From: Macrostomum lignano
Lineage: Eukaryota
Direction of reading: 5' to 3'
Length of the DNA stretch: 64,000 bases
Assembly: GCA_002269645.1 (NCBI GenBank)
Contig: NIVC01001143.1
Location: 1 to 64,000, forward strand
The notes under the pieces are model-generated. The model was not told where the DNA came from. It searched no databases and worked only from the letters and a program-made list of their open reading frames with translations. Shown here piece after piece: positions 7,201 through 64,000 of this stretch. How positions within the stretch are numbered: the first letter of the stretch is position 1; each line of letters begins with the position of its first letter. The translations under genes and the position numbers were made by a program.

Positions 7201-10200
7201 CGTAGAAGTGATTTGGAACTTCATTCTGGCTTTCAAAACATCAGTCTCAAAAAGGGGTTACCCTATTGTGCATCGTCTGCTGCTAGAATCGAACCAACTT
7301 ACAGACTCCATTCGATGAACGCCAACTTCATTACCGCATACTCGTAGTGGCTAGCTGGTAGAAACAAGGCCCCGGGTCGGTGCCAGTTCAGAGCTGAGCA
7401 AACGTCCCCTGCCAGCTGCCGGGAGACTCCCGTAGTCCCAGCCATCATGTGGTGACGGCAGCGTCCCTCGAAATAGTAGAAATTGACTGGACAGTCTGTG
7501 TGGGAGGTCGCATGTTTTGAATATTTCCCATTAATTTGGCATTTGCTGTTGGAAAATGCGGCTTTCAGCTTCGTTGGACTCACCTTCGGTCGGGCAACCA
7601 AACAAGTCAACGCCAAACTCGTTGATCTCGGACGCATTGGCTGTCAGCTGGCCGACCGTGGCAATGACGGTTCGATTCAACCATACTGAGTTGCTTCCGT
7701 TGCTAACGCTGATCGTCTAAAAAAAGCATTAAATAAGTTTAAGGCTGATTCAGACGCACTTCGGAGAGCTGGAGCATCAAATGTTCCTTACCAAAACCTC
7801 CGATGAATGATCGTTCAATGAGAGACGAATCCAAGCGGTCGGAAAGTTGCTGTTAACGGCAACGCTTATGTTGGTGAGATAGTGAGCCCGATGCAGAGTG
7901 AAGTTTAACACCCGCTGTCCCTGCTGCGAGGACCGATTGAAAACTACGGAGCTGGATGGGATTGGTTCGCACTCTGAAATGTTTGTCGATGTAGGTGCAC
8001 TTCCGTATTCGTCCTCGAGGATATGAAGCACAGGGAGAGGTGGGCTAAAGCCCCAAAATGTCCCCTGCCCTTCCTCCGTCCTGCGCAGGGGCCCTGCTTG
8101 GACTCAACCGCAGGGACATCAGGTCGGTGACCATGGACCTCTCGGTTCATGGCTGTTTTGCCAGACATCGTTAGCTCCAGGGAAAATCCGTAGCGAGGAA
8201 TGCCCCTATGGTGTCGAGAATGCGGAGCATTTCATCTGTGAATGCCCCGCCTTTACTCAGGACAGGCTCGGCTCACCTACCTCGGCCCAAACCCGGACCT
8301 CTCCGACGTTTTCAGGCCCGAGAACCTCTGCCAGCTCGCCCGCTACCTAAGGGCTACCGGGCGAGCGACCATCCACCTCCTAAACTCTCCGGAGGGGGGA
8401 GAGGGAGGAACTCCCTGCACAATACCACAGCATTAGCTTCCTCGCTACATCCGGATGCACAGAGCCCCCCTGCAACTAAGTCAAGTAAGTCAAGAGGATA
8501 TGAAGAACAAATTAAGCCAGCAGAAATCAACACTCACGGACTGGCAGAGCAACAAGTTCAAGCCGCAGTGCCCCTCGCTGGCAACTTTGACGGATGTCAG
8601 GGTGATCAACTTGGCAACGATGGGTTCTGGGAAGTCTTCAACGAGTTCCGCAGAGCCTGTGTTCGTACCCAACAGGGTTCTATTGGGAGGGAACTGCCTG
8701 GCCACCTCCATTGGCCTGTCGGCGTCGTTGACACGCGACTGCAGGTGGAACGTGTCCACGTACGACTCGGCGATGCCTCGGCTGGTCAGACCGAAGACTC
8801 GATGCGGCACAGGGAACTTGACTGTCATTGAGCTGTTGACTGGCAGCGGCATGAGCCCGGGTCCCTGCAGCAGAGAGGCTGTGCCCAATGACCAGGAGCT
8901 CACATTGCCCGGCCTGCGAACTGTCACTTGGTGAGGCCAGTATGGCGCCAATGGAATCTCATCTGAAGCGCCCGGTGTTGGGCAGCCGAACAGCTCAAAC
9001 TTGCCCGCCAGACGGCCCCGAATCAGCAGCGGATGAAACCGGAACAGCCGGCCAGTGACCGGGTGTTGGAGTTTCTCGATAATTGACGTGCAAGTGTCCG
9101 GCCCGTATAAAGTCTGTATGGGAGGAGAGGAGGAAAGTTTTGAGAGAGTATTTTTAAGACCATTGGCCCTCACAAATCACAAAACAGACTTTGCTCCGTA
9201 CTTACATAAGGATACATGCGCCACTGTCTATTGCAGCAGGAGAACAGCAAGATGTACACCAGCAAGGCCTCGTGTGGAAGTCCTGGCAGGCAAAACACGC
9301 CTGACACACCAACTGCGGTGACGGTGACGGTGACTCGAAAGTTCACCTGCAGCCACTCCTCCGGACCGGTAGATGCCGCGCGGTAGAACCCGAAGGTGGC
9401 TACGCTGGAAGCTGAATCAACAAGGGTGGAAACCGGAATAAAATGACGCGGAATGGAAATTTAAAACCCACAAATACTACTTACTTTGAGAGAAGTAGCT
9501 GAACGCTGCCATTTCCGGAGAATGCCCAGTGAGACTTGACTTGGTAGAAATATTTAACAGAACTGGAGAACCTTCCCAGAATGCACCGATGAGCGGATGG
9601 TCGCAATCGGGATCTGAAAATGAATTTTTAATGAGTTTTATCCCGCTAAAAGCAGGTCGCGTCACTGAGATAGCGCAGTGCAGCTAGTGCAGTGCAGCTA
9701 GTGCAGCAGCTTACCATAGCAACTCCACTGAAGCGCCATGGAAGCATTCACATTTGAACTCCGCGTTGACCTCGCTGCGGCTGTGGCGACAGGATCAGCT
9801 AGCAGCACTGCTGTGCAGTTGCCAGTGATGTTTCTTTGGCAGTCAGCGAGTGCAAGAAAAGTTGAGTTGGTCAGGCTGTACTGCTCAATCTGTGTTGTGT
9901 CGTTTTGACTGAGCTGCGATAAGTACAGCCGCTTGCTGCAAGTTCCATCTGAAAGAGTTTTGAGCACTGATTTGTAACCGACTGGAAGCATTTTTTGAAC
10001 AGCAAATCTGCAAAGTTGAGCTGCTCACTGTGGCTGAGAACTGCGGGAATTTCGCATACAAACGGGAAGGCGCTGCTTTCACTCTCGCAGGCCACGCTGT
10101 TCCAGGCCATCCGCTCCCCGATTTCCGCCACAACGCAGCCGTTCGCTGGCGGCTCAGCGTGCCAGCTGTTGAGGTGCAGCCCTAGCGGCGTCCCGTCTGA

Positions 10201-34200: not shown

Positions 34201-35182
34201 CACACTACCTGTCCCACACCACCTGTCTCACACTACCTGTCTCATACTACCTGTCTCACACTACCTGTCTCACACTACCTGTCTCACACTACCTGTCTCA
34301 CACTACCTGTCTCACACTACCTGTCTCACACTACCTGTCTCACACTACCTGTCTCACACTACCTGTCTCACACTACCTGTCTCACACTACCTGTCTCACA
34401 CTACCTGTCTCACACCACCTGTCTCACACTACCTGTCTCACACTACCTGTCTCACACTACCTGTCTCACACTACCTGTCTCATACTACCTGTCCCACACT
34501 ACCTGTCTCACACTACCTGTCTCACACTACCTGTCTCACACTACCTGTCTCACACTACCTGTCTCACACTACCTGTCTCACACTACCTGTCTCACACTAC
34601 CTGTCTCATACTACCTGTCTCACACTACCTGTCTCACACTACCTGTCTCACACTACCTGTCTCACACTACCTGTCTCACACTACCTGTCTCACACCACCT
34701 GTCTCACACCACCTGTCTCACACCACCTGTCTCACACTACCTGTCTCACACCACCTGTCTCACACCACCTGTCTCACACTACCTGTCTCACACCACCTGT
34801 CTCACACTACCTGTCTCACACCACCTGTCTCACACTACCTGTCTCACACTACCTGTCTCACACCACCTGTCTCACACTACCTGTCTCACACTACCTGTCT
34901 CACACTAGTCTCACACCACCTGTCTCACACCACCTGTCTCACACTACCTGTCTCACACCACCTGTCTCACACCACCTGTCTCACAGTACCTGTCTCACAC
35001 CACCTGTCTCACACCACCTGTCTCACAGTACCTGTCTCACACCACCTGTCTCACACTACCTGTCTCACACATGTACCAAACCAGTGCTATCAGAAAGCCG
35101 TAAGCTACTCACCGATGTTCTGAGCAGCCGATAGTTGCCAGGCCCCCAGGCTCAGAAGGCAGGTAATGAGACTGATAGCCAT
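1..35182 (-). CDS. Giant multi-exon polycystin-1-like (PKD1/REJ family) receptor with lectin-rich ectodomain; 3' end lies beyond position 1
   Basis: Dozens of minus-strand exons with GT-AG boundaries; phases matched at the junctions checked except in the REJ region below 1270. Order: signal peptide, F5/8C-like, CTL, kringle-like, fucolectin-like, fibrinogen, EGF-like, PKD repeats, REJ. GPS and TM regions are not in the window. Confidence 0.85.
1265..4699 (-). CDS. PKD repeat region (exon 4107-4699 and large exon from 4007)
   Basis: PKD motifs: VEFGNGSS...[24 protein letters not shown]...[29 protein letters not shown]. Intron 4008-4106 (GTAAGT...CAG) joins the two ORFs in phase 0. Confidence 0.85.
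4803..4955 (-). CDS. EGF/EB-like cysteine module exon
   Basis: CYSDLAC...VC...[16 protein letters not shown]; the exon ends at a GC donor. Confidence 0.65.
5010..5570 (-). CDS. Fibrinogen C-terminal (FReD) domain exon
   Basis: DWIVVY...EYFYGF...WLGLKAL...MRVDIWN...KFSTFDHG...C...GWWYKDC matches the fibrinogen-related domain signature. Confidence 0.85.
5641..5782. repeat. Degenerate GATCAGATCT low-complexity repeat (intronic)
   Basis: Repeated gatcagatct units are visible. Confidence 0.7.
5797..16395 (-). CDS. Further F5/8C, C-type lectin and PAN-like exons
   Basis: F5/8C motifs [10 protein letters not shown] (11115-11285), EWLQVNF (about 9350) and FKLDLFGC (about 5810). CTL exons at 10040-10590 and 6790-7560 (WSHWRVGEP...CAAS...W...C). 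Confidence 0.75.
8029..8493 (+). mobile_element. 5'-truncated non-LTR retrotransposon (I/R1/LOA-like) 3' fragment
   Basis: 12-bp TSD GAGGATATGAAG at 8017-8028 and 8494-8505; CCHC-like tail ([14 protein letters not shown]); short TAAGTCAAG 3' repeat; homologous to 61340-61995. Confidence 0.85.
11503..12075. repeat. (CTCCT)n pentanucleotide microsatellite
   Basis: Tandem array with degenerate ends. Confidence 0.95.
12306..13244 (+). pseudogene. Nested two-exon pseudogene: signal peptide, TNFR/GCC2-GCC3-like Cys repeat and fucolectin/galactose-binding-like domain
   Basis: Exon 1 12306-12569: [18 protein letters not shown]...CLPGNY...[10 protein letters not shown]...T*...CDWCPGG...C. Donor A|GTGAGT and acceptor ttcag|AA are both phase 1. 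Exon 2 12862-13244 is open. Exon 1 has stops at 12315 and 12480 and a net frameshift. Confidence 0.7.
13290..15860 (+). mobile_element. Degenerate Ty3/Gypsy LTR retrotransposon (gag, protease and RT remnants), interrupted at 14205-15012
   Basis: gag-like AEAWLLSF and [10 protein letters not shown]; zinc knuckles CQYCGGSH and [14 protein letters not shown]; protease remnant [13 protein letters not shown]; RT remnants [21 protein letters not shown] and [10 protein letters not shown]. The putative LTR at 13290-13520 is uncertain. Confidence 0.85.
14205..15012. mobile_element. Non-autonomous TIR DNA transposon (808 bp, P-like or hAT-like)
   Basis: 80-bp TIRs starting CAAGGACCACTAGAAG with 2 mismatches; 8-bp TSD ACCCCGCG at 14197-14204 and 15013-15020. 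Confidence 0.92.
16500..22230 (-). CDS. Cassette 2 exons: F5/8C, C-type lectin, kringle-like and two fucolectin-like domains
   Basis: F5/8C: LTGLLMQGG...[12 protein letters not shown]: [13 protein letters not shown]...WHWLDG. Kringle-like: ITAGGKACL. Fucolectin-like: LAVDGNF...[12 protein letters not shown] and CEFEVYG. Confidence 0.75.
16871..17153 (-). mobile_element. tRNA-derived SINE, copy 1
   Basis: Minus-strand head has A-box TAGCCTATTGGTTAGAGC and B-box GGTTCGATTC, then GTGTCCTTAAGCAAG and a CTGTAAAATGGGTACC core; homologous to 21010-21297. Confidence 0.8.
21010..21297 (-). mobile_element. tRNA-derived SINE, copy 2
   Basis: Colinear with 16871-17153 over the full length. Confidence 0.8.
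23523..23905. repeat. C-rich CCCCAACCCCTA-type degenerate repeat (G-rich on the minus strand)
   Basis: Dozens of C3-C4 runs separated by 1-3 nt. Confidence 0.85.
24215..24432. repeat. CT-rich low-complexity tract
   Basis: Degenerate (TCTC) array. Confidence 0.8.
25141..25935. repeat. 22-bp minisatellite CACTCACCCACACTCACACATT
   Basis: Intronic tandem array. Confidence 0.92.
26313..30900 (-). CDS. Cassette 1 exons: C-type lectin, kringle-like and fucolectin-like domains
   Basis: CTL: [13 protein letters not shown]...[18 protein letters not shown]...[10 protein letters not shown]. Kringle-like: [10 protein letters not shown]. Fucolectin-like: [11 protein letters not shown]...[15 protein letters not shown] across intron 26564-28162. 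Confidence 0.75.
26606..28158. repeat. 32/35-bp minisatellite CTTGATCAAGAAGGCATCTGCCTGCTCAGACA(CTA)
   Basis: Tandem array without spacers, filling intron 26564-28162. Confidence 0.95.
29030..29720. repeat. 18-bp minisatellite CCAGTGACATTTTGACTC
   Basis: Tandem array with a 234-bp higher-order duplication. Confidence 0.92.
30186..30362. repeat. 57-bp unit x3
   Basis: Three tandem copies in the intron after a CTL exon. Confidence 0.85.
31052..31180. repeat. 10-bp repeat CCCAACTCAA
   Basis: Tandem array. Confidence 0.85.
31190..33360 (-). CDS. N-terminal discoidin/F5-8C-like exons
   Basis: Exons 33008-33360, 32763-32916 and 31590 downward join in phase; the F5/8C-like end motif [12 protein letters not shown] is present. 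Confidence 0.65.
31644..32750. repeat. 13-bp minisatellite GGGATCTGGGATC (about 85 copies)
   Basis: Essentially invariant array inside intron 31591-32762. Confidence 0.97.
33407..35070. repeat. 14-bp minisatellite ACACTACCTGTCTC
   Basis: Array filling most of intron 1 of the polycystin-like gene. Confidence 0.95.
35113..35182 (-). CDS. First coding exon of the polycystin-like gene (signal peptide)
   Basis: ATG at 35182 gives [23 protein letters not shown], then a phase-1 donor G|GTGAGT that matches a phase-1 acceptor into the 32930-33376 ORF frame. This exon is absent from the ORF track. Confidence 0.8.
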
Positions 35183-51728: not shown

Positions 51729-54062
51729 CTAGGCCTCCGCGCCCTCGCTGTTGCAGACTTCGCTGACGGTGGAGTACGAGAGCCCCGAGGGGGCCGGGGA
51801 CGCGGCACCGGAAGAACAAGCCAATGGAACCGATGCCGAATCGGAGGCACCGGCGCCTTTTTGCTCAACATCGTCGCCCTCGCCCTCACATTCGCTGGCG
51901 CCAAAGCGCGGCAGCAGGAGGCCGCAGGCGACGTCGGGTGGTACGACGACCCGGCCGAGGCGCAGGGGCTGCAACGTCGAAGCTTCCTGGGCTTTCACGG
52001 TGCCGAGGGCGGCGTCTTCGGCGGCCTGCAGAGCGGCGTCGGCGTCGGCAGGCTCGGCAAAGGTCACGAAGCCGAAGGCCGGCTTGCCCTGGGCTGCCCG
52101 CACCAGCCAGAGGTCGACAACGCGACCATGGACGCTGAGGCGCTGGCGCAGCTCCGCCTCGGTGGCCTCCGAAGGCGCGTTGGCCAGGTAGAGCCGGTGC
52201 CGCCAGTCCGGGCACTCGCGGACCAGCTCTCGCAGCAGCGGGTCCGCGCCGGGCTGGTTGGCCGGCCGGCTGACGCACAGGCGCTTCCCGACTGAGCGAG
52301 TGAGGCACCAGAGTGACAGCTGAGTGACAGCTGAGTGACAGCTGATGAGCTGAGCGAGTGAAGCATCAGAGTGACAGCTGATGAGCTGAGCGAGTGAGGC
52401 ACCAGAGTGACAGCTGATGAGCTGAGCGAGTGAGGCATCAGAGTGACAGCTGATGAGCTGAGCGAGTGAGGCACCAGAGTGACAGCTGATGAGCTGAGCG
52501 AGTGAGGCATCAGAGTGACAGCTGATGAGCTGAGCGAGTGAGGCATCAGAGTGACAGCTGATGAGCTGAGCGAGTGAGGCATCAGAGTGACAGCTGATGA
52601 GCTGAGCGAGTGAGGCATCAGAGTGACAGCTGATGAGCTGAGCGAGTGAGGCATCAGAGTGACAGCTGATGAGCTGAGCGAGTGAGGCATCAGAGTGACA
52701 GCTGATAAGCTGAGCGAGTGAGGCATCAGAGTGACAGCTGATGAGCTGAGCGAGTGAAGCATCAGAGTGACAGCTGATGAGCTGAGCGAGTGAGGCACCA
52801 GAGTGACAGCTGATGAGCTGAGCGAGTGAAGCATCAGAGTGACAGCTGATGAGCTGAGCGAGTGAGGCACCAGAGTGACAGCTGATGAGCTGAGCGAGTG
52901 ACGCATCAGAGTGACAGCTGATGAGCTGAGCGAGTGACGCATCAGAGTGACAGCTGATGAGCTGAGCGAGTGAGGCACCAGAGTGACAGCCATCATTCAA
53001 GTCACAACCCAAGACACTCACGCAGCGACACAGTGTTGAGGCTCTCAATGGCCAACAGGGCGGCCTCGGGCAGCAGGAAATTGGCAAAAGCGAAGCCCCT
53101 GTTGATGCCGCCGGGCCGATGCCGATGGGCCAGGAGGGTCACCGGTCCGAACTCGGACAGCAGGTCGGTGAGCTGCGCGTCGGTGACGCGGGCAGGCAAG
53201 TTGCCGATGTACACCCGGCTGAGCAGCACCACGGCGTAGGCGCGGTTCAGCCTCGGCTGGCTCTGCAGTTTGGGTGGGAGATGCGCTACAGAGCGATTCT
53301 GGTGGCGTTACAGGGCTGAGATGTCAAGGCTCACTGGGGGAATTGCTGAGATGTCAAGGCTCACTGGGGGAATTGCTGAGATGTCAAGGCTCACTGGGGG
53401 AATTGCTGAGATGTCAAGGCTCACTGGGGGAATTGCTGAGATGTCAAGGCTCACTGGGGGAATTGCTGAGATGTCAAGGCTCACTGGGGGAATTGCTGAG
53501 ATGTCAAGGCTCACTGGGAGAATTGCTGAGATGTCAAGGCTCACTGGGGGAATTGCTGAGATGTCAAGGCAAATATGATTCACGAAGGGGGCACTAGATT
53601 GCTAATTCTGCAATAAAGGTTTAGTGCAGCTTTTAGTGCAACAACATATCCGTAAGCAATATTCGGAGAGCAAAGACATCTGCCCAGCTGACTGGCAGCT
53701 CACATTCAGTCTGGCTCGAGTCAATAAGATTACTGAGTCCTAATGCTAACGCTTTCAACACTATCCATGAGAGTCTCATGAGAGCGAATCGCACGAATAC
53801 CCAAATTTTGGCTCCGTCGGAATCGAACTCAGGGGCCGTAGCGACCCGGCCGCCGCCTTACCAGCTCCGGCCCGGCCCGGCACAGCGCGAACCGCACAGT
53901 CTCCCGCCTGGCGAACTGCGCCGCCCGACGCCTGGCGCGCCGCTGGCCAGCGTCGCCTGCGGGCAGCTCGAAAGTCGCAACGGCGCGACCGCGGCTGCCG
54001 ACGGCGACTCCGGAGCCGAAAGCCAGCTCGCCGACCTGGACGAAGGAGTCAGCTGACCCGTG
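51729..54062 (-). CDS. Two-RRM RNA-binding protein (ELAV/Sxl-like layout); exons 53862-54062, 53022-53262, 51729-52291
   Basis: RRM1 has RNP2 VYIGNL and RNP1 RGFAFANF, with LNTVSLLGKRLCVSRP across the junction. RRM2 has LYLANA and PAFGFVTF. Splice phases 0/0 and 1/1 match. No Met codon in the 334 spliced sense codons. Confidence 0.85.
52293..52990. repeat. 36-bp minisatellite CAGAGTGACAGCTGATGAGCTGAGCGAGTGAGGCAT
   Basis: About 19 copies filling RRM gene intron 52292-53021. Confidence 0.95.
53316..53570. repeat. 30-bp minisatellite GCTGAGATGTCAAGGCTCACTGGGGGAATT
   Basis: Tandem array in RRM gene intron 53263-53861. Confidence 0.93.
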
Positions 54063-54875: not shown

Positions 54876-57800
54876 TCAGGCGCCAACCTCAACCTCGATG
54901 TCGGAGCCCTCCTCCTCCTCGATCTCCGAGTCGGACAGCGGCACCATCTGGCTGTGCGGGTGGTGGTGGCCGATGCCGCCCACCACGGCGGACGGGATGG
55001 CCTGGATGATCTGCGGCATGCCGGCGCCAGCGGCTGCGGCGGCCCCGGCAGCTGCGGCCTCCAGCTTGCGCTGGGCGTGCACCGACTCGAAGTCGGGGAC
55101 GACGGCCTCGCGCCGCTCGTACAGCGCGTTGACGAAGAATCGCAGCGAGGGCGGCACGGACTCGATGATGTCGTCAACCGGCTCGTTGTTGGTGGCCAGC
55201 TGGTAGCCCAGCGAGCGCAGCACGGCCGTGTCGTCCGAGATCTCGAAGGTGTGGTCGAAGGTGAACAGGTACTCCAGCTTGTCCTTGGTGATGTTGCAGT
55301 CGGTGACAGTGTTGGGCGGGCAGGAGATCACCAGGAACGGCAGGTGCAGCAGGGAGGCTTTAGGCGCCTGGCCGTACATCTGCTCATTCTCCCGGTTCCG
55401 CTTGACCAGCTGCTTGAAGGCGATGAGCTGGCACACCTGAGGGAGACGGGAGGGATCAAAAGTCAGGCTGCAGTGGGAGCACAGATCCCACCAACAGTCA
55501 GGCTGCAGTGGGAGCACAGATCCCATTAACAGTCAGGCTGCAGTGGGAGCACAGATCCCACCAACAGTCAGGATGCAGTGGGAGCACAGATCCCACCAAC
55601 AGTCAGGATGCAGTGGGAGCACAGATCCCATCAACAATCAGGCTGAGGTCACGCGGAGGGATTCAACACAAGGGAAGGCACCCAGTCAGCACCCAGCAGA
55701 TGTCAGGCCAACCAACCTTCTCGGAGATCTCGTTGGCCTTCTCCCGAATCCGCTTGAGCCGCTCCTCCCGCTCCTCCTGCAGCTTGCGGCACTGCACGAT
55801 GGCGTTGAGCGGCATGCCGACCCAGGTGATCTCCTTGTTGTCCCGGCGAATGACGCCCATGGCCAGCAGGACGTTCAGAGTGTCGTAGGCCCTGCGGCGG
55901 ATGTTCTTCTGATGGTAGATGAGCTGGTCCTGCGGCATCAGTGGGTGCTCAGCCGCGAATTCGTGCACGAGCTCGTCGGCCACCTCATAGTAGGAGGTGA
56001 TGGTCTTGTTCTGCAGCTTCTCAACCACTGCGCCGGCGTACTTGCGCAGGCCGGAGCCGCCGCGGGCCCCCGAGCCCGCGTAGTCGTCGTCGTCTATCCA
56101 GTCCTCGGCGCCAGCCGGGCCGGCGGAGCCGCGGGCGCGCGGCGCGAAGCCCAGGCCGAAGCCGGCGCCGCCGCGCACGGAGGTCGGCGTGACGGCCTTC
56201 AGCTTGGGGTCGGGCAGGAAGCCGCGCGCCTGAACGGCGCCACTGCCGAGCTTCCGCTGTTGCTGCTGCTGCATCGGGAGGCTGCGCACCTGCAATGCAA
56301 AGTCAAATCAATCAGGAGATATTGACAGACCGTTGACAATGACAGTAAAAATTAGACCTGTAATACATGATATTTGTTAGAATTGATAAGACAACGATAG
56401 TGCCGGTGATTTTACACGATTTGCAGTTTTACACGACTACTGTCAGCTTGCGCCTACTGATAAGTAGAAAGTATAGAGTGTGGCGCGAAAATTATAAGTC
56501 GAAAGTCTATTTATTTTTCGAACGAAATGAATTATTATGAAAGTTACTCAGCTAAAAGTGAATTCAGTCCAACCTGAATGATCCGCTGCGCCCCGGCAGC
56601 GGTGATGACGCGCAGAGTCTGGCCGCCCTGCTGCTGCATTCCCCCCGGGCCGACCTGCCGGACAATCTGCTGCTGCTGCTGCTGCTGCTGAGACCGCGGC
56701 GGCAGCGTGATGATCTTGATGCTGCCTGTGCCGGACTGCTGGCTCCCCGCTGCCAGCTTCTGCACCGGCAGGCGAATCACCCGCACCGGCTTGCCGCTGC
56801 CGTCTCCGACGCCGCCAGCGCCGGCACTGCTGACGGTTGGAGCCGCCATGGCGACCGAGTGCCCGGCCGATCCGGCCGTTGTCTGAATGCGGATCACGCG
56901 GGGCTGCGACGCGGCCGCCGACGGATGAACCTAGCAGGTAGGGCAGTTGGCGGGGTCAGAGAAAGGTCAAATTTGGCAACACTTGGCAACGATCGACACC
57001 ACTTAGCAACATACCTATCGACACCAGTTAGCGACATATCTTATCGACACCAGTTAGCGACATACCTATCGACACCACTTACCGACATACCTTATCGACA
57101 CCACTTAGCAACATACCTATCGACACCAGTTAGCGGCATACCTTATCGACACCACTTAGCAACATACCTATCGACACCAGTTAGCGGCATACCTTATCGA
57201 AAGCACTTAGCGAGATAGCTATCGACACCAGTTAGCGGCATACTTTATCGAAACCACTTAGCGAGATAGCTATCGACACTAGTTAGCGGCATACCTTATC
57301 GACACCACTTAGCGAGATAGCTATCGACACCAGTTAGCGGCATACCTTATCGACACCACTTAGCGACATACCTATTGACAACAGATAGCGACATACTTAT
57401 CGACAACAGATAGCGACATACCTATCGACACCAGTCAGCGACATACCTATCGACACCACTTACCGACATACCTTATCGACACCAGTTAGCAACATACCTA
57501 TCGACACCACTTAGCGAGATAGCTATCAACACCAGTTAGCGGCATAACCTATCGACACCACTTAGCGACATACCTATTGACAACAGATAGCGACATACCT
57601 ATCGACAACAGATAGCGACATACCTATCGATAACAGATAGCGACATACCTATCGACACCAGTGAGCGGCATACCTTATCGACACCAGTCAGTGACATACC
57701 CATTAAAGCCCTGCTTCTCACATACCTGAATGACAGTTGGCTGTCTGGCTTCGCCGCCGGGCGACTCTTCAACCCCAGTAGTTGTGGGCTCCCGCTTGAG

Positions 57801-57926
57801 CTGGCCGCCAGAGCTTTCTCGAAGCTGCGCAGAAGCAAAGGCGGAGGACTCGGCAGCATTGCCAACAACAACTTCTTCAGCCACATCTGACTCCATAAAG
57901 TCCAGCGATTCTACATCAACATCCAT
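54876..57926 (-). CDS. Dp: Transcription factor Dp (E2F dimerisation partner, TFDP family), about 563 aa; exons 57726-57926, 56574-56930, 55717-56289, 54876-55436
   Basis: DNA-binding domain TSYYEVADELVHEF...NIRRRAYDTLNVLLAMG...KEITWVGMP; coiled coil QLIAFKQLVKRNR; LPFLVI...DCNITKDKLEYLFTFDHTFEISDD. All junctions are phase 0. Confidence 0.95.
55462..55640. repeat. 35-bp minisatellite CAGTCAGGCTGCAGTGGGAGCACAGATCCCACCAA
   Basis: About 5 copies in Dp intron 3. Confidence 0.9.
56992..57695. repeat. 25/26-bp minisatellite (ATCGACACCACTTAGCGACATACCT-type)
   Basis: Variable-unit array filling Dp intron 1. Confidence 0.9.
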
Positions 57927-57999
57927 GATTGCTATTGGGTTTGAACTGCAAGTAGAGGAATGATGTATTTATTTATGAGCTTATTTTTAATTAATTCCT

Positions 58000-58482
58000 T
58001 TGTTTAGTATCTGGGTCTCAAATTTTGAATGCAAACCATAAACTTATAATGCCATTGGCATCAGTCATCAAAGTGGTGCAAAGTATCTCAGCAGTAAATG
58101 TGTCTGAGGCATCAACTTTGTTATCAGTGGGTCTTTCCCCAACCTTTCTAATGCCATACTAGCACTAAAGGATGCCAAGGCCATATGGGCAGCCCTCATC
58201 TCTGATGTCTCAGAGCTGGACTTGTTAATGACTTTTTTGGCTAGGCTCTACAGGTAGGGGAACTACAAGAATAGTACAACCAACTATGTGCGATTGAATG
58301 AAATTGAAAACTGTGACCCACTCACTACCCACCTGCCCTACCATTTGTATAGGTTGCTGCAGTGCACATGCTGGTTCTCTTCCACCATGAGGTCGTTGAT
58401 CACTTGCCAGGTGGTGCTCTATGTAATCTGCTAAACAATAGTTCCCAATTGGCTGCTGCTGCTCCCAAGGGCAATGTTGCAT
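58000..58482 (-). mobile_element. Possible highly decayed LINE reverse-transcriptase remnant
   Basis: YIEHHLASDQRPHGGREPACALQ loosely resembles the L..LL...QHGFR.GRSC.TQL region of non-LTR RTs; weak. Confidence 0.3.
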
Positions 58483-59469
58483 ATGGGGTGTCTTGCAGTA
58501 CTAGATGCTAAAATTCCTCCTAAACGCTAAAAATGTCATTTTACTTTGCAAGTATGTTTCTTAAAAAAACCATCTCTTAAAGTATATCATTTTTTAATAT
58601 TACAATTTATTTTGATTGTAAACAAAAATAAAATTTTAGTTATAACTCAAAATTACTAATGTATAGTTTTTAGGGATTAAAAGCCAAAAAATACTTCAAA
58701 CCTAAATGGTTCAAATTGAAATTACTAACTTCCTTCTTTCCTTCCTAAATATGGCAAAGGTTAGGACATAAGAATAGAAAATCCATATAAGAAATACATG
58801 TAAAAATTAATATAGGTAGATTAAAGAATTCTATTTGGAGGGGCTAAAAATGGGTGCTGACCAATTTGGCCACAAACAAATGTAGCAATTTGGTAACAGA
58901 AATTCACAAAAGCAAATTTGGCAAAAATCTAGTTGAATTTGGTGACAAAAATTAAGGAAGAATAATTGAGTATAATCTTATTATTTTTTTGGACAATTGT
59001 ATTAGTCATAGCATATTAGCTTTTCCTCTTTAGTTTTTTTCAAATTGACAATCAGATAAGATAATATGCATTTTGACTTGTCATTGCATCTGGGTAAAAG
59101 CTCTTTACAATGCCAATGGCTTTAAGGAAGCAGACAGAAATGCATAGCTAAATTTCAGGAAAAATGGAACTTTCACAAGCATTTAAAAAAACTGTATATG
59201 TAATTTTCTTTAACTTTAGCTATAACTCATTTTTAGTATATGGAATTATAATATAAAAGATTTGTTGCCAAATTTGCTTTTGCCAATTTGTCTATATTAA
59301 ATCTCTGTTGGCAAATTTGTGTGCATTAAAAAACAGGCATTAGCTAAATCTAAGTGCTTCTATACTTTTTGAAATAATTAAATGTTCTAAGATTAAAAAG
59401 ATAAACTTGAATTTTTTACAAAATTCCAACTGTTTTAGCAAATCAACTTTGTTATGTTAACCATGCTAT

Positions 59470-59900
59470 GTTGTCAAATGTATGCCACTGGCTTGTGATC
59501 AAAGCACTCAACAGAGGTGAACACCCAAAAGACATTGCAAGGTTGCTTAATATAGAAGAAAGATGGTTTACAGCATCCATTAGCATGTTGAAACCACTTC
59601 TGGCATAGGTTGCCTGTGAAAGGTGGCAATCACCAAGGCAAGTTGCTAGAGACACAGGTCCAACTGCTACTTAATGCAATTGAGACGTACCCTTTGTTGA
59701 CATTGCAGAAAAAGCAACAGCAATTGAAGGAACAGTTCCAGTTGGTTATCAGATTTGAGAAGAGCTCTGGAAAAGCAACTGAAAATTACCAGTATAGACG
59801 CTGACATTCCAGCGGTGCGCAACAACCCTTAGGTGGTTGTGAGAAGGCAAGAGTTTGCCATTGGCTCACAAGCATTTGGACCAAATTGATGCTTGTTGGA
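59470..59900 (+). mobile_element. Decayed IS630-Tc1-like transposase remnant
   Basis: LVIKALNRGEHPKDIARLLNI and GGNHQGKLLETQVQLLLNAIETYPLLTLQ resemble the HTH region of Tc1-like transposases. Confidence 0.45.
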
Positions 59901-61339
59901 CCAAATTAAATGCCGCTGCACCAGCCTTGCTACCATAGACAAAAGCTCTGTTACATTGGCAAACATATCCTGGATTAAATTCAATGCGCATAAGCCCAAA
60001 TGGGCTAGAAAAGCTATAACTAAGAGCAAACAAGCACCTAATGAATTTTTCTATAGTAAAGTAAAGTATATTTGTTAATACATTCAAAGTTGATTACATT
60101 GAATAATTTAAAATTAAAAAATGGAAAATATATTATAAAATTTCCTTTTATTAATTGTACTTTATTAGGTATAATTTTTGTTTTTAAATCTATGATGCAG
60201 TTTACAAAGGTATTTTTGTTTTACTCTACCTGTTTCAATTTTTTTAAATTTATAACTATGGCTATAGGAATCTATAGAATATGACAGCAACTACTATAGT
60301 TCTATAGTCTTAGCTGTAAGAGCAGCTCTCTATTGTAGGCATATCCATAGTTGTTATAAGCACCTATTTTACAATATTTGCCATAAGATCCCATAGCTAT
60401 AGCTGTAGCTACAGCAAAACACTGTTATTAATGCCAATTAACTAATTAACATTTATTAAAAGATTGGTATCCCAAAGTTCAGAAGGTGACATATATGCTG
60501 AGATTTCTTAGCATACAACATGGGTCTTACTATTTTTAACATACATCAGGGTATATCCTAGCATACATGACAGTCGATACATTGAGTCAAATGACAATTT
60601 TTTGGTATTGGCATACAAACCCAACATATAAATGAGGTCTCATCATTTTTCTAGCATTAAATCTAATATACACTAATATACAATCCAAACTATGGCTAGT
60701 ACCCAACATTGATAGTTAGAGTTAGAGCTTACTGGTTCTTCTAAAAATGGAAAACTAATTTTAAAAAAACTATTACTTACTTTTTAAGAAATTAAAATTA
60801 AATAAAAAATAGTTAAAAGAAACTAGGCCTAGTTTTTTTAACAATTCAATAAAAAAATTCTTTTTTACTTGTTATCTTTTAATCTTTAAAGATCTAACCT
60901 TAAAAAATTTAAAAGCATTAAATATTGGTCATAATATGTAAACTTTTTTTGCCATTTTTTTGTATACAATAAAAAGTCCATGGCATTGGTATACATAAGC
61001 TAGGGAAGCAATTTTCATTCCAGTGTATACTGGTATACAATCCTAACTGACTTCCAAGTACTGTTACAAATGTTTTGATGACTCTTGTTGTTTGTGATTT
61101 ATTTTTATCAATACAACAATTTGAACAATAGATAAAATGAATTTAAAAAGCTAAAAACATATTGCCATTGGGCATAGAAATTGGTTAAATAAAAAGTTAA
61201 TAAAGAATTGACTATATAAAATCAACTAGTAATATAGAAAAATTAGTAGAGAAAAGGTTATTAAAAGTTTCTCACTGATTGCATTGTATGATAAACATCA
61301 TTACAATAGCATTATTGCCTATAAGTTATGGAATGTCAT

Positions 61340-61995
61340 TCGCCTTCAATCATTATGGTTAATGTGTCATGGAAGGTCCCCTGCCTATGGCCTTTATCCC
61401 TATCGCCGTTGTCACCACTTGTATCAACCAGTGGCAGTGGGTGACTTCTAAGCACAAGGAGAGATGGGCTAATACCCACAACTGCCAGCAATCCTGTGCA
61501 GCTGTCCCCTGTCCTTTCTCTGCCTTGCGCAAGGCCCTGCTTAGACTCAATTGCAAGGACATCAAGATAATGACCATGGCCCTCTTGGGTCATGGCTGCT
61601 TTGCGAGGCATCGTCACCTCTAGGGGAAAATCCACAGTGAGGAATGCCCTTTTTGTCACTCTGGTGTTGAGAATGTGGAGCACTTCATCTGTGAATACCC
61701 CCTCTTTACTCATGACAAGCTCACCTACTTTAGCCTAAACCTAGACCTCTCCAACATTTTCAGGCCCAAGAATCTCTGCCAGTTCATCCATTAGCTAAGG
61801 GCTACCAGGCAAGCAACAATCCACCTCCTGGACTCTCCAGAGGGGGACCGCACTGTGGACACTGGCACCACTAGAACTCCTTGCGTGACACTGCAGCATT
61901 AGCTGCCCATGGTTGCCAGAGGCTAGCAAAGTATGTGGCAACGCCACCTTGCTGTCTCTGGACACACGGAACCCCCTGCAGCTAAGTCAAGAAGT
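61340..61995 (+). mobile_element. Old copy of the same non-LTR retrotransposon 3' end as 8029-8493
   Basis: Colinear homology; LLRLN...MALLGHGC...CPFCHSGVENVEHFIC; ends in TAAGTCAAG. Confidence 0.85.
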
Positions 61996-62180
61996 GATGG
62001 AAGGTCACTTTGCGACAGAGAATAGGCCTATCAAGTGCTATACATAGAATGCAAACAAGCAATAAGAAAGTGAAGCTGATTTTTGCGTGCAATATTTTTA
62101 TCTGGGCACTTGCCTTTGGGCCAGAAATGGTAATCTAATGAATAATTGCTGGAAGCAGTGCCATATACTAAGCTCAAAAT

Positions 62181-62368
62181 CAGTAGCGCAACCAGAAATT
62201 TTTCAAGGGGGGGGGGGCGGATTCTGAGGGTAAAGTCCCAGGAGGGGGGGCGGCGAAGGGGTGGCTGTTTTTGGCGAAAATTCGCTTGGTCCCCCCTTTG
62301 ATTTTTTTCAGTCCCCCGCCTAAGGGGGGGGCGACCGCCCCCCGCCCCCCCCCCTGGTTGCGCCACTG
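62181..62368. mobile_element. hAT-type MITE (188 bp)
   Basis: 15-bp TIRs CAGTAGCGCAACCAG / CTGGTTGCGCCACTG and 8-bp TSD CTCAAAAT (62173-62180, 62369-62376). Confidence 0.9.
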
Positions 62369-63277
62369 CTCAAAATAGATTATTAAGAGAATTGTTACAT
62401 ATGTATTTGCTATTAACAAGTCGCATTAGCGAAAATAATGAACTTAATGAAATTATTTGGCCTATATAATTAACGAAAATAATTTGGCCTAATTTGTCTA
62501 AGCCGTAAGGCCAAAAGAGAAATGACCGGCTTTGTGGTGAAATTGGCTTTACTTTTGTCCTATGCATTCCTTTAGCGGTTGGCATTCTATGTATAGCGCT
62601 CGATATTCTCTGCCTTGCAATTATTTAAAACGCACAAATAAAAATTGCCATGAAATTTTTTTTATATGATCTAGATTTTATCTATTTTAGAATCAGAAGA
62701 CACATAGAACTTTGGTTTTTAATGTATGAATAGATAATAGAATAAAGTTAACTGACTCGACGATCGATCGACAGTGTCCGACACATAGATCTTTATTCTA
62801 AAAGAGAATAACGCTCGATATATATATTCTCTGTATTCTAATGATCTATGATCCGACATTATTAAAAACATAGAAACAACTCAGAAAAACAAATACTCAA
62901 AAATGGTGCCTTTTATAGCGTTGCTAAAAATAAATTGCTTTATTTTTCATTTTATTAGATTTACTGTCTATTTTTTTTTTGTTTCAGGAACTAAATCAAC
63001 TACATTTAGAAGTCATCTTTGCATTTTTAACAAAGAATAAAGAAGCGTGTTTTACATTGCCTAGTCAGAATTTAGTATCAGCTTAGAATGATAGATAATG
63101 GTTGAAAAATGCTAAATATTAGAAAGTATTTCTTTTCAAAAATTGAATTTTGTGTACAATGACGGCAAGTTTTGAATGACCTCGAGGAAATTGATTTAAC
63201 GTTCATTCCTATGATTCGGGTAAAGTTTTCAACAATAGATTTTTTAATATTAAACCCTAATCATATAATTTCACTAA

Positions 63278-64000
63278 ATGGAATCAAGCGGAGCATCAAA
63301 CAGTTCAAGCCCAGGAGGTACTGCACCAAATTCGTCTCCGAGCTTTACTCCACCAATTAAAAGTGAACAGCTCCCTGTTGGAAAGAAGCTGACTAAAGAT
63401 CTTGTGTTGTCGAAGTCTAAAGGAGGGAGTCTCATTGAAATTAAAAAGATCGTTGTATGGTATGTTATTTTTTGTTTCTTTGATCTTTTATAGAAACACA
63501 TAGCTTTGGTGGGGAAATTTCTCTTCCATTTGTGAATGTATACTCAACAACATTAACAAGTCGCCACCTTTGAGAGTGCGCAGCAAATTCTAGCTCAGTA
63601 TTGACTTTTGAGTGACACAACTTGCGCCACGCGAATTGGGCTAGGTGTGGAGGGATCGGGAGGAGTGGAGGGCGAAGATTGGACGGATTGAAGCTTTCGC
63701 CTGGTTTTAATTTTTTTCAAGCATTTTTTAAATATCAAAATAGTTAGGTGATGTGTAGACGCTGATCAAAGACACTGCTCACTGGGGCAAAGGTTGGCGA
63801 CTTCAATGTTCCTGAGTATATTTTAATTTAATATTAAAAAGTGAAAATTAATCAGAAATTTAATCGAAAGCTGATTTTTCTGGGTTATTCTTTAATGGAA
63901 AACCAGAAAGGTTTAACTGTAGCAGATTTTGTTTGAAAACATGCTTTTAACCTACCTGTTTTGCTATTTTAGGGGACAGAAGATCACAGACTGCAGTATT
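63278..64000 (+). CDS. 5' exons (63278-63454, 63973 onward) of an unidentified gene
   Basis: MESSGASNSSSPGG...KKIV|GTATGG (phase 0) joins ttttag|GTEDHRLQY in frame; too short to identify. Confidence 0.5.

What the first reader, a model, noticed from the sequence alone, without database searches (positions are those of the whole stretch)
57950..62050. Sharply bounded 4 kb CpG-deamination scar, with an internal control
Seen: about 20 CpG in about 4 kb by eye (one in 60000-61330), while the rest of the window, including introns and TEs, is CpG-rich. The LINE copy at 61340-61995 differs from its relative at 8029-8493 at most CpG sites by CG>TG or CG>CA (gtcgag>gttgag, tgcgga>tgtgga, ccgacg>ccaaca, cgggcgagcg>caggcaagca). 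Established: this is the signature of germline 5mC deamination. Inference: a focal methylated domain of old TEs next to Dp and the 63278 gene, in a mostly unmethylated genome; methylation follows position rather than TE family.
Basis: partly seen in the sequence, partly recalled or inferred. Interest (0 to 1): 0.7.

Follow-up and report, generated by a model that had tools for sequence, protein, structure and literature searches.

The report
CpG-decayed transposon island upstream of Dp
A 4.2 kb stretch of dead transposons just upstream of the cell-cycle gene Dp has lost about 85% of its CG dinucleotides to TG/CA, the classic scar of inherited cytosine methylation, while the neighbouring genes, introns, repeats and related transposon copies elsewhere kept theirs; the genome appears to be a Macrostomum-type flatworm, where the location of DNA methylation has reportedly not been mapped.

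Summary
Window 57950-62050 has 21 CpG against 125 expected (O/E 0.17), and all five sub-segments lie at 0.00-0.24. The 107 non-tandem 1-kb windows outside it range 0.60-1.15, and the equally AT-rich right flank is 0.90. TG/CA is in matching excess. The window's other CpG-free stretches are minisatellites whose unit has no CG.

Two independent TE families show that the loss happened after insertion. Polarised with two outgroups, the block's LINE copy has 14 CpG transitions against 0 in its relative at 8 kb, with no excess of other changes (7 vs 13). A DNA-transposon relic is 83% identical to a Macrostomum lignano element and has lost 17 of 44 CpG bases against 23 of 224 other G/C bases. An inverted-repeat element straddling the right edge is CpG-poor only on the half inside the block.

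RIP-like editing, APOBEC-like editing, a host-DNA misjoin and Dp gene-body methylation are all rejected.

Best reading: a sharply bounded domain of germline 5mC over an intergenic island of TE relics, in a genome otherwise free of CpG decay. The edges lie within about 75 bp of the Dp start codon on the left and at 62.14-62.43 kb on the right.

Methylation itself is inferred, not measured. This is a known kind of signature in a lineage where it is informative, so interest is moderate.

The parts
57927..62180 (.). CpG-depleted domain: an intergenic island of TE relics between the Dp start codon and the neighbouring gene's upstream region
   Evidence: O/E 0.17, 21 CpG against 125 expected; change-points 57854 (57849-57923) and 62187 (62135-62251, or 62161-62430 without the MITE); no tandem arrays inside
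57950..58530 (.). Sub-segment b1: unclassified sequence, GC 42%, 3 CpG against 25.8 expected
   Evidence: no Pfam hit in either strand's translation
58900..59289 (.). Foldback or MITE-like inverted-repeat element inside the AT-rich sub-segment b2 (58531-59440, 0 CpG against 15.5 expected)
   Evidence: 28-nt arms 89% complementary, extendable to about 60 nt; CpG count
59463..60032 (+). 5'-truncated relic of a TIR DNA transposon (helix-turn-helix transposase N-terminus plus right TIR), with stops and one frameshift
   Evidence: 83% nt identity over 567-582 bp to the M. lignano element L003 9944-10697, which has 147-bp TIRs; only protein hit is P0174 of M. lignano; weak HTH_29 match; O/E 0.23 against 0.73 in the M. 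lignano copy
60033..61335 (.). Sub-segment b4: AT-rich unclassified sequence (GC 26%), 1 CpG against 22 expected
   Evidence: no ORF, Rfam or repeat match
61340..62000 (+). 5'-truncated LINE 3' end (ORF2 C-terminus with CCHC knuckle), in one frame with 2 stops; CpG O/E 0.15-0.24
   Evidence: Alignments to the copy at 8 kb and to outgroups L001 and L002; outgroup P0005 carries RNase H
7990..8493 (+). Comparator: dead copy of the same LINE family (stops and frameshifts) that kept its CpG (O/E 0.66)
62014..62614 (.). Inverted-repeat element straddling the right boundary (arms about 62016-62056 and 62578-62614)
   Evidence: 25/28 core match, 1.6e-5 expected by chance; two of three mismatches are CpG>CpA or TpG on the inner arm; left part O/E 0.17, right part 1.12
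62181..62368 (.). Young hAT-like MITE nested in that element: 15-nt TIRs, poly-G/C core, 8-bp target-site duplication CTCAAAAT. It hides the exact right edge.
54876..57926 (-). Dp (E2F dimerisation partner) gene: coding exons 57926-57726, 56930-56574, 56289-55717, 55436-54876, giving 563 aa. CDS CpG O/E 0.99; unique intron 2 O/E 1.27.
   Evidence: Pfam E2F_TDP and DP; clean spliced ORF; sequence
57946..57982 (-). Acceptor-like ttcctctacttgcag ending 21 nt upstream of the Dp ATG. It could be a cis or spliced-leader acceptor; a TATA-like ataaataaata plus CAGT initiator is the alternative reading.
   Evidence: Read directly from the sequence; no consensus donor on the minus strand in 62050-63277; SL trans-splicing affects 10-30% of Macrostomum genes (PMC10468722, PMC8629364)
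63278..63460 (+). First coding exon of the divergently oriented neighbouring gene (function unknown). Its 1.1 kb upstream region is AT-rich but CpG-replete.
   Evidence: ORF and gtatgt donor; O/E 0.90-1.26; no Pfam hit

Best explanation
The block is an intergenic island of at least five dead transposon fragments that has been CpG-methylated in the germ line (in flatworms, the neoblast and germ-cell lineage) for a long time, while the DNA on both sides was not. Spontaneous deamination of 5-methylcytosine turned CG into TG or CA about ten times faster than other substitutions accumulated, driving CpG O/E from about 0.7-0.8 down to about 0.17. The methylated domain stops within about 75 bp of the Dp start codon on the left. 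On the right it stops inside a small inverted-repeat element at about 62.14-62.43 kb, roughly 1 kb before the neighbouring gene. Shown by analysis: the depletion, the reciprocal TG/CA excess, the polarity and CpG-specificity of the substitutions in two TE families, the boundaries, and that the block belongs to the same (Macrostomum-like) genome. Inferred: that the cause was 5mC, that it acted in the germ line, that it targets this place as a silenced TE island bounded by two active 5' gene regions, and that it persists today.
For: Depletion and controls matched for GC. TG/CA excess inside the block only. LINE pair polarised with two intact CpG-replete outgroups: 14 CpG transitions in the block lineage against 0 in the 8-kb copy, while non-C>T changes are 7 against 13, so the block copy is not simply older. 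Second family against the M. lignano copy: 17/44 CpG bases against 23/224 other G/C, and 0/12 in reverse. Pooled contexts: CpG 45%, CpA 11%, CpC 8%, CpT 14%. CpG to non-CpG rate ratio about 10. Within-element contrast across the right edge: O/E 0.17 against 1.12, and both arm CpGs decayed only on the inner arm. Sharp change-points. Dp CDS, Dp intron 2 and the CG-bearing minisatellites are not depleted. Literature: M. lignano retains DNMT1 and DNMT3 and has low-level 5mC (PMC11292947, PMC10658182, PMC9246332). TE-only methylation with unmethylated genes and low-complexity repeats exists in a few animal lineages (PMC12460157).
Against: No methylation measurement is available. This is one locus in one 64-kb window. 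The positional claim rests on one within-genome TE pair, one pair whose comparator may be from another species, and a 600-bp element with few CpG sites. Part of the 8-kb LINE copy's divergence could have arisen in an active master lineage, so that copy could have inserted later than the block copy. There is also a milder excess of non-CpG C>T in the block lineage (13 against 7), and the block is AT-rich, so a general GC-to-AT bias acts here too. The species is inferred and not identified; parasitic flatworms and planarians lack DNMT1 and DNMT3.
Confidence: 0.68

Rival explanations
1. Time, not place. The lineage once methylated more of its genome, and the block is simply the oldest neutral DNA in the window. 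It keeps the scar, while everything else non-coding (minisatellites, MITEs, the other TE copies) arrived after methylation receded.
For: Much of the remaining non-coding DNA is demonstrably young or homogenised: 24% of the window is minisatellite, and the MITE has an intact TSD. The 8-kb LINE's insertion date is not known independently. Flatworms as a group have repeatedly lost DNMTs (PMC9246332).
Against: The 8-kb LINE copy is itself dead, with stops, frameshifts and as many non-C>T derived changes as the block copy (13 against 7), yet it has 0 CpG transitions. Unique AT-rich DNA in Dp intron 2 and at 62.37-63.28 kb shows no depletion. A single inverted-repeat element is decayed on one side only.
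Confidence: 0.15
2. Linked to a transcription unit. The block is the Dp 5'UTR intron or the outron upstream of a spliced-leader acceptor, and CpG loss reflects intragenic methylation or transcription-associated deamination of that transcribed segment.
For: The left edge coincides with an acceptor-like ttcctctacttgcag 21 nt before the Dp ATG. SL trans-splicing is common in Macrostomum and enriched in conserved and stem-cell genes (PMC8629364, PMC10468722).
Against: The rest of the Dp transcription unit is not depleted (CDS 0.99, intron 2 1.27). The decay products show no strand asymmetry (TG 286 against CA 298). No consensus donor lies upstream on the minus strand. Invertebrate gene-body methylation normally spares the 5' end, not the reverse (established knowledge).
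Confidence: 0.1
3. Inherited or foreign composition. The block is a misjoin, host or contaminant DNA, a horizontally acquired piece, or is built from TE families that are intrinsically CpG-poor.
For: GC 35% with O/E 0.17 resembles vertebrate DNA, and there is a composition switch at 57.95 kb.
Against: The LINE in the block is 78.6% identical to one at 8 kb in the same window. The transposon relic's only relative in 5.8 billion proteins is from M. lignano, at 83% nt identity. Relatives of both families are CpG-replete (O/E 0.66-0.83), so the families are not intrinsically CpG-poor. An inverted repeat spans the right edge. AT-richness continues to 64 kb without CpG loss.
Confidence: 0.03
4. Hypermutation unrelated to methylation: RIP-like or APOBEC/AID-like editing of repeats.
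For: The targets are TE relics, and there is some excess of non-CpG C>T (13 against 7).
Against: The preference is for CpG (45%) and not CpA (11%). CpA and TpG are enriched, not depleted ((CpA+TpG)/(ApC+GpT) = 1.48). There is no TpC or CpC 5' preference (6/93 and 12/100). RIP is not known in animals (established knowledge).
Confidence: 0.02

Closest known systems
Classical CpG depletion by 5-methylcytosine deamination (vertebrate bulk DNA; methylated compartments of mosaic invertebrate genomes)
   Same: O/E about 0.2, reciprocal TpG/CpA excess, CpG transitions about 10-fold faster than other changes, and sharp transitions to unmethylated CpG-replete DNA near gene 5' ends.
   Different: Here it covers a single 4.2-kb intergenic TE island in a window that is otherwise undepleted. 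Gene bodies, the usual invertebrate target, are spared.
TE-restricted methylation without gene-body methylation, as described for the chaetognath Paraspadella gotoi, early-diverging nematodes and ctenophores (PMC12460157)
   Same: Genes and low-complexity or tandem repeats appear unmethylated and TE-derived DNA appears methylated. The lineage also uses spliced-leader trans-splicing, the association noted in that paper.
   Different: Only a sequence proxy is available here. Two other TE relics in the window (LINE at 8 kb, LTR-gag fragment at 15 kb) are not depleted, so targeting is not simply 'all TEs'. The state of this genome's DNMT3 domains is unknown.
Low-level 5mC reported for Macrostomum lignano, which retains DNMT1 and DNMT3 (Wasik et al. 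2015, as cited in PMC11292947, PMC10658182 and PMC9246332)
   Same: Same or closely related genus. Low global methylation is what a few focal methylated islands in an otherwise CpG-replete genome would produce.
   Different: [quoted passage not shown] I could not read the primary paper.
Repeat-induced point mutation (RIP) of fungi
   Same: C>T decay confined to repeated or TE DNA, producing AT-rich blocks with sharp edges.
   Different: RIP favours CpA and depletes CpA/TpG. Here CpG is the target and CpA/TpG are enriched. The host is an animal.

Membership tests
5mC-deamination footprint (historically methylated DNA) | CpG observed/expected far below 1 after correcting for base composition | tested here: met
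   O/E 0.17 (21 against 125.3 expected); controls matched for GC give 0.90 and 1.27
5mC-deamination footprint (historically methylated DNA) | Reciprocal excess of TpG/CpA | tested here: met
   Odds ratio 1.25 in the block against 0.99-1.04 in the right flank
5mC-deamination footprint (historically methylated DNA) | Substitutions polarised CG>TG/CA and enriched over other contexts | tested here: met
   14 against 0 CpG transitions with outgroups; 17/44 against 23/224; pooled 40/89 against 8-14%
5mC-deamination footprint (historically methylated DNA) | 5mC actually present on the DNA in germline cells | not testable with these tools
   No methylome or read-level data for this genome are available
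5mC-deamination footprint (historically methylated DNA) | Genome encodes DNMT1 and/or DNMT3 | not testable with these tools
   Neither is in the window. The literature says M. lignano has both (PMC11292947, PMC9246332), but the species of the window is only inferred.
TE-only methylome (chaetognath, ctenophore or early-nematode type) | Gene bodies unmethylated | tested here: met
   Proxy only: Dp CDS O/E 0.99 and intron 2 1.27. The PKD/REJ gene at 0.60-0.77 is slightly lower.
TE-only methylome (chaetognath, ctenophore or early-nematode type) | Transposable elements are methylated as a class | tested here: inconclusive
   All TE relics in the block are depleted, but the LINE relic at 8 kb (O/E 0.66) and the region of the LTR-gag fragment at 15 kb (0.74-0.85) are not. 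These are short fragments lying inside a gene.
TE-only methylome (chaetognath, ctenophore or early-nematode type) | Low-complexity or tandem repeats not methylated | tested here: met
   Proxy: minisatellites whose unit contains CG keep it (O/E 1.07 and 1.43)
TE-only methylome (chaetognath, ctenophore or early-nematode type) | DNMT3 lacking the PWWP and ADD domains | not testable with these tools
   The gene is not in the window
Invertebrate gene-body methylation (of Dp) | CpG depletion across the exons and introns of the transcription unit | tested here: not met
   CDS 0.99; intron 1 1.25; intron 2 1.27
RIP-like hypermutation | CpA>TpA bias, with (CpA+TpG)/(ApC+GpT) below about 1.03 | tested here: not met
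   Index 1.48; CpA sites changed 14/129 against CpG 40/89
Foreign or misjoined DNA | No sequence relationship to the rest of the contig or to the host lineage | tested here: not met
   LINE 78.6% identical to the copy at 8 kb; transposon relic 83% identical to M. lignano; inverted repeat spans the right edge

The most novel reading that the evidence does not exclude
Macrostomum-type free-living flatworms, which kept DNMT1 and DNMT3, use them only for focal silencing of intergenic TE islands and have no gene-body methylation. This would be a further independent (or anciently shared) 'retargeted' methylome in a trans-splicing lineage, alongside chaetognaths, ctenophores and early nematodes. The methylated domains would end abruptly at active gene 5' ends and would be chosen by location or chromatin state and not by TE family.
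Probability: 0.3. Interest if true: 0.6.

Novelty: new member of a known kind. Interest (0 to 1): 0.42.

Why it matters
CpG decay is a free, long-term record of where germline methylation has been. [quoted passage not shown] This locus predicts what such a methylome should look like: unmethylated genes and minisatellites, with a few sharply bounded methylated islands of TE relics that can sit right next to a housekeeping gene's start. That prediction can be tested directly with existing long-read or bisulfite data. It also bears on the proposed link between trans-splicing and loss of gene-body methylation (PMC12460157). On its own, though, it is one locus showing a textbook mutational signature.

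Tried and rejected
1. The window's other CpG-free stretches are all minisatellites without CG in the unit, so they are not comparable.
2. I added outgroups and a second family to compensate.
3. Pfam on translated relics gave only a weak helix-turn-helix match. Rfam (gathering threshold on the whole window, E-value threshold on the block) and tRNA scans found nothing.
5. My first stitching of the transposon relic across frames was wrong in the middle. The M. lignano protein showed that frame 0 continues there.
6. A consensus-donor scan for an upstream Dp exon found no site scoring 6 bits or more. This is weak evidence, because this genome also uses GTTGG donors.
7. The CpG-poor stretches of the M. 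lignano locus L003 are all tandem arrays, so there is no second example of a non-tandem block there.
8. No clear target-site duplication was found for the 62014-62614 inverted-repeat element, so its status as a TE is only probable.
9. The primary M. lignano genome and methylation paper is not held in the library.
10. The sample label BUSI22-1 of outgroup L001 could not be traced.
11. I considered a mitochondrial-DNA (NUMT) origin for the AT-rich parts. No recognisable mitochondrial protein segments appear in the six-frame translation.
Full report
OBSERVATION

A 1-kb sliding CpG observed/expected profile drops from 0.9-1.17 at 55-58 kb to 0.05-0.22 across 58-62 kb, then returns to 0.7-1.0 by 62-64 kb. 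Base composition predicts 125.3, so O/E is 0.17 (Poisson P = 1e-30). All five sub-segments are depleted (0.12, 0.00, 0.23, 0.05, 0.24).

AT-richness does not explain this. The right flank 62370-64000 has the same GC (33%) and O/E 0.90, and the unique Dp intron 2 (GC 35%) has 1.27. The lost CpGs reappear as TpG/CpA: the odds ratio is 1.25 in the block and 1.04 in the flank. Among non-tandem 1-kb windows, the 16 lowest all lie in the block, and the 107 windows outside it range from 0.60 to 1.15.

They are minisatellite arrays whose unit has no CG. Such arrays make up 24% of the window and 0% of the block.

BOUNDARIES

A likelihood change-point model places the left edge at 57854 (2-lnL support 57849-57923), within about 75 bp of the Dp start codon. 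It places the right edge at 62187 (62135-62251), or at 62161-62430 if a young MITE is masked.

SURROUNDINGS

Dp lies on the minus strand, with Pfam E2F_TDP and DP domains. Four coding exons (57926-57726, 56930-56574, 56289-55717, 55436-54876) splice into a clean 563-aa ORF with GC3 of 0.86 and CpG O/E of 0.99. Its introns are not depleted: intron 1 is a CG-bearing minisatellite at 1.25, and intron 2 is at 1.27. Gene-body methylation of Dp is therefore excluded.

A second gene starts at 63278 on the plus strand, so the block sits in a 5.3-kb divergent intergenic region and occupies the 4.2 kb nearest Dp. Twenty-one nucleotides upstream of the Dp ATG the minus strand reads ttcctctacttgcag|TTCAAACCC. 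This could be a cis acceptor of a 5'UTR intron, a spliced-leader acceptor, or a TATA-like box plus a CAGT initiator. No consensus donor lies further upstream, and trans-splicing is common in the inferred genus (PMC10468722, PMC8629364). The sequence alone cannot decide between these.

WHAT THE BLOCK IS MADE OF

There are no tandem arrays and no ORF over 125 aa. Recognisable pieces are:
- A foldback or MITE-like inverted repeat at 58900-59289.
- A 5'-truncated TIR DNA-transposon relic at 59463-60032.
- A 5'-truncated LINE 3' end at about 61340-62000.
- The left half of an inverted-repeat element at 62014-62614, which carries a nested hAT-like MITE (62181-62368) with an 8-bp target-site duplication, CTCAAAAT.
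Two segments remain unclassified: 57950-58530 and 60033-61335.

TEST 1: THE LINE PAIR

The only repeat shared between the block and the rest of the window is 61503-61846 against 8059-8398, at 78.6% identity. In the aligned core, 23 of 45 CpG bases of the 8-kb copy are T or A in the block copy, against 18 of 157 other G/C bases, and reverse changes are rare.

A protein query built from both copies found two intact relatives in ENA metagenome contigs (64-65% amino-acid identity, CpG O/E 0.78 and 0.83). Polarising with these:
- Derived in the block copy: 34 changes, made up of 14 CpG transitions, 13 non-CpG C>T or G>A, and 7 others.
- Derived in the 8-kb copy: 20 changes, made up of 0 CpG transitions, 7 non-CpG C>T or G>A, and 13 others.

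The 8-kb copy is itself dead, with stops and frameshifts. The block copy has therefore not accumulated more clock-like change, and its excess is CpG-specific. The CpG to non-CpG rate ratio is about 10, the magnitude known for methylated CpG.

TEST 2: A SECOND FAMILY, AND THE ORGANISM

The transposon relic's only significant hit among 5.8 billion proteins is a hypothetical protein of the free-living flatworm Macrostomum lignano. Its locus (GCA_002269645.1, NIVC01001942.1) aligns to window 59463-60018 at 83% nucleotide identity, and it belongs to a 754-bp element with 147-bp TIRs. That locus has the same minisatellite-rich architecture as the window.

Dp's nearest named relatives in an exhaustive HMMER search are also flatworms, though only at 53-56% identity. 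The window is therefore most likely from Macrostomum or a close relative. The species is not established.

Against the M. lignano copy, 17 of 44 CpG bases are transitions in the block copy, compared with 23 of 224 other G/C bases (Fisher P = 1.5e-5). In the reverse direction no CpG bases changed (0 of 12). O/E is 0.23 in the block copy and 0.73 in the M. lignano copy.

TEST 3: WITHIN ONE ELEMENT

The inverted-repeat arms at 62029-62056 and 62578-62605 match at 25 of 28 positions, where 1.6e-5 such matches are expected by chance. Two of the three mismatches are the outer arm's CpGs reading CA or TG on the inner arm. The element's left part has O/E 0.17 (1 CpG against 5.8 expected) and its right part 1.12 (8 against 7.1). 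The numbers are small, but the direction is as predicted for a process that depends on position and acts in place.

ALTERNATIVES EXCLUDED

Pooled over both families, C>T changes toward the block occur at 45% of CpG sites, against 11% at CpA, 8% at CpC and 14% at CpT, with no TpC preference. The RIP index (CpA+TpG)/(ApC+GpT) is 1.48. RIP-like and APOBEC-like editing are therefore rejected. A host-DNA misjoin or foreign origin is rejected by the three links to the same genome and lineage. TG and CA counts are equal (286 and 298), which argues against transcription-strand-biased deamination.

WHAT REMAINS OPEN

The main open rival is time rather than place: the block could be the oldest neutral DNA and record an era of broader methylation. 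The dead but CpG-intact LINE at 8 kb, the undepleted unique AT-rich DNA nearby and the half-decayed inverted-repeat element all argue against this. Insertion dates cannot be fixed from one window, however. There is also a milder general GC-to-AT drift in the block lineage (13 against 7 non-CpG C>T).

COMPARISON WITH WHAT IS KNOWN

The signature is the textbook footprint of 5mC deamination. The pattern has three parts: genes and tandem repeats spared, TE-derived DNA hit, in a trans-splicing lineage. It most resembles the TE-only methylomes described for a chaetognath, early nematodes and ctenophores (PMC12460157). Membership of that class is not shown, because two TE fragments outside the block are undepleted and the DNMT toolkit of this genome could not be examined.

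[quoted passage not shown] I could not read the primary M. lignano paper, so some of this may already be known.

VERDICT

This is a new instance of a known kind of feature, of moderate interest. It becomes more interesting if a genome-wide scan or methylome shows that this is how Macrostomum deploys its methylation.

Noticed in passing
window 5726-57700 (26 arrays; e.g. 26605-28159, 31639-32749, 33406-35070, 56992-57700): Minisatellite arrays with periods of 4-36 bp make up 23.9% of the window and 42% of 23-58 kb. Several lie in introns, and at least one runs through an ORF. Arrays whose unit contains CG keep it (O/E 1.07 and 1.43).
   Followed up: partly
window 62181-62368: A 188-bp hAT-like MITE with 15-nt TIRs (CAGTAGCGCAACCAG / CTGGTTGCGCCACTG), an internal poly-G/poly-C palindrome and an intact 8-bp target-site duplication CTCAAAAT. 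It looks recent.
   Followed up: partly
L003 9944-10697 (M. lignano NIVC01001942.1): The annotated 'hypothetical protein' BOX15_Mlig015650g2 lies inside a 754-bp element with 147-bp terminal inverted repeats, so it is a transposon-derived ORF and not a host gene.
   Followed up: partly
window 586-25149, minus strand: A large polycystin-1/REJ-like gene (PKD, REJ and Fibrinogen_C domains; lectin-like and discoidin-like ORFs further 5') with slightly lower CpG O/E (0.60-0.77) than the rest of the window. The cause was not examined.
   Followed up: no
window 57950 (boundary) and 54876-57926: There is a sharp composition switch. The Dp CDS has GC 67% and GC3 0.86, whereas everything from 57.95 to 64 kb is 26-37% GC. 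AT-richness extends beyond the CpG-poor block, so the two properties are separable.
   Followed up: partly
window 51729-53087, minus strand: A 452-aa ORF with an RRM domain reads straight through a 36-bp minisatellite (52333-52990), giving about 18 tandem 12-residue repeats. It is unclear whether this part is coding or intronic.
   Followed up: no
window 15003-15476, plus strand: An LTR-retrotransposon gag fragment with a zinc knuckle and a protease-like segment ([17 protein letters not shown]...). It has no Pfam hit, and CpG in its region is not depleted (0.74-0.85).
   Followed up: no
window 62740-62860: A cluster of CG-containing palindromic motifs (gactcgacgatcgatcgacagtgtccgac) about 450 bp upstream of the 63278 gene. 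This may be a promoter element for one or both divergent genes.
   Followed up: no
L001 (ENA ERZ28573545, BUSI22-1_SAMN19433712_METAG) and L002 (ENA ERZ27249365): Short 'metagenome' contigs that encode intact, CpG-replete LINE ORF2 C-termini 64-65% identical to the window's family. These are eukaryotic (probably invertebrate) DNA within metagenome assemblies, and the host is unidentified.
   Followed up: partly
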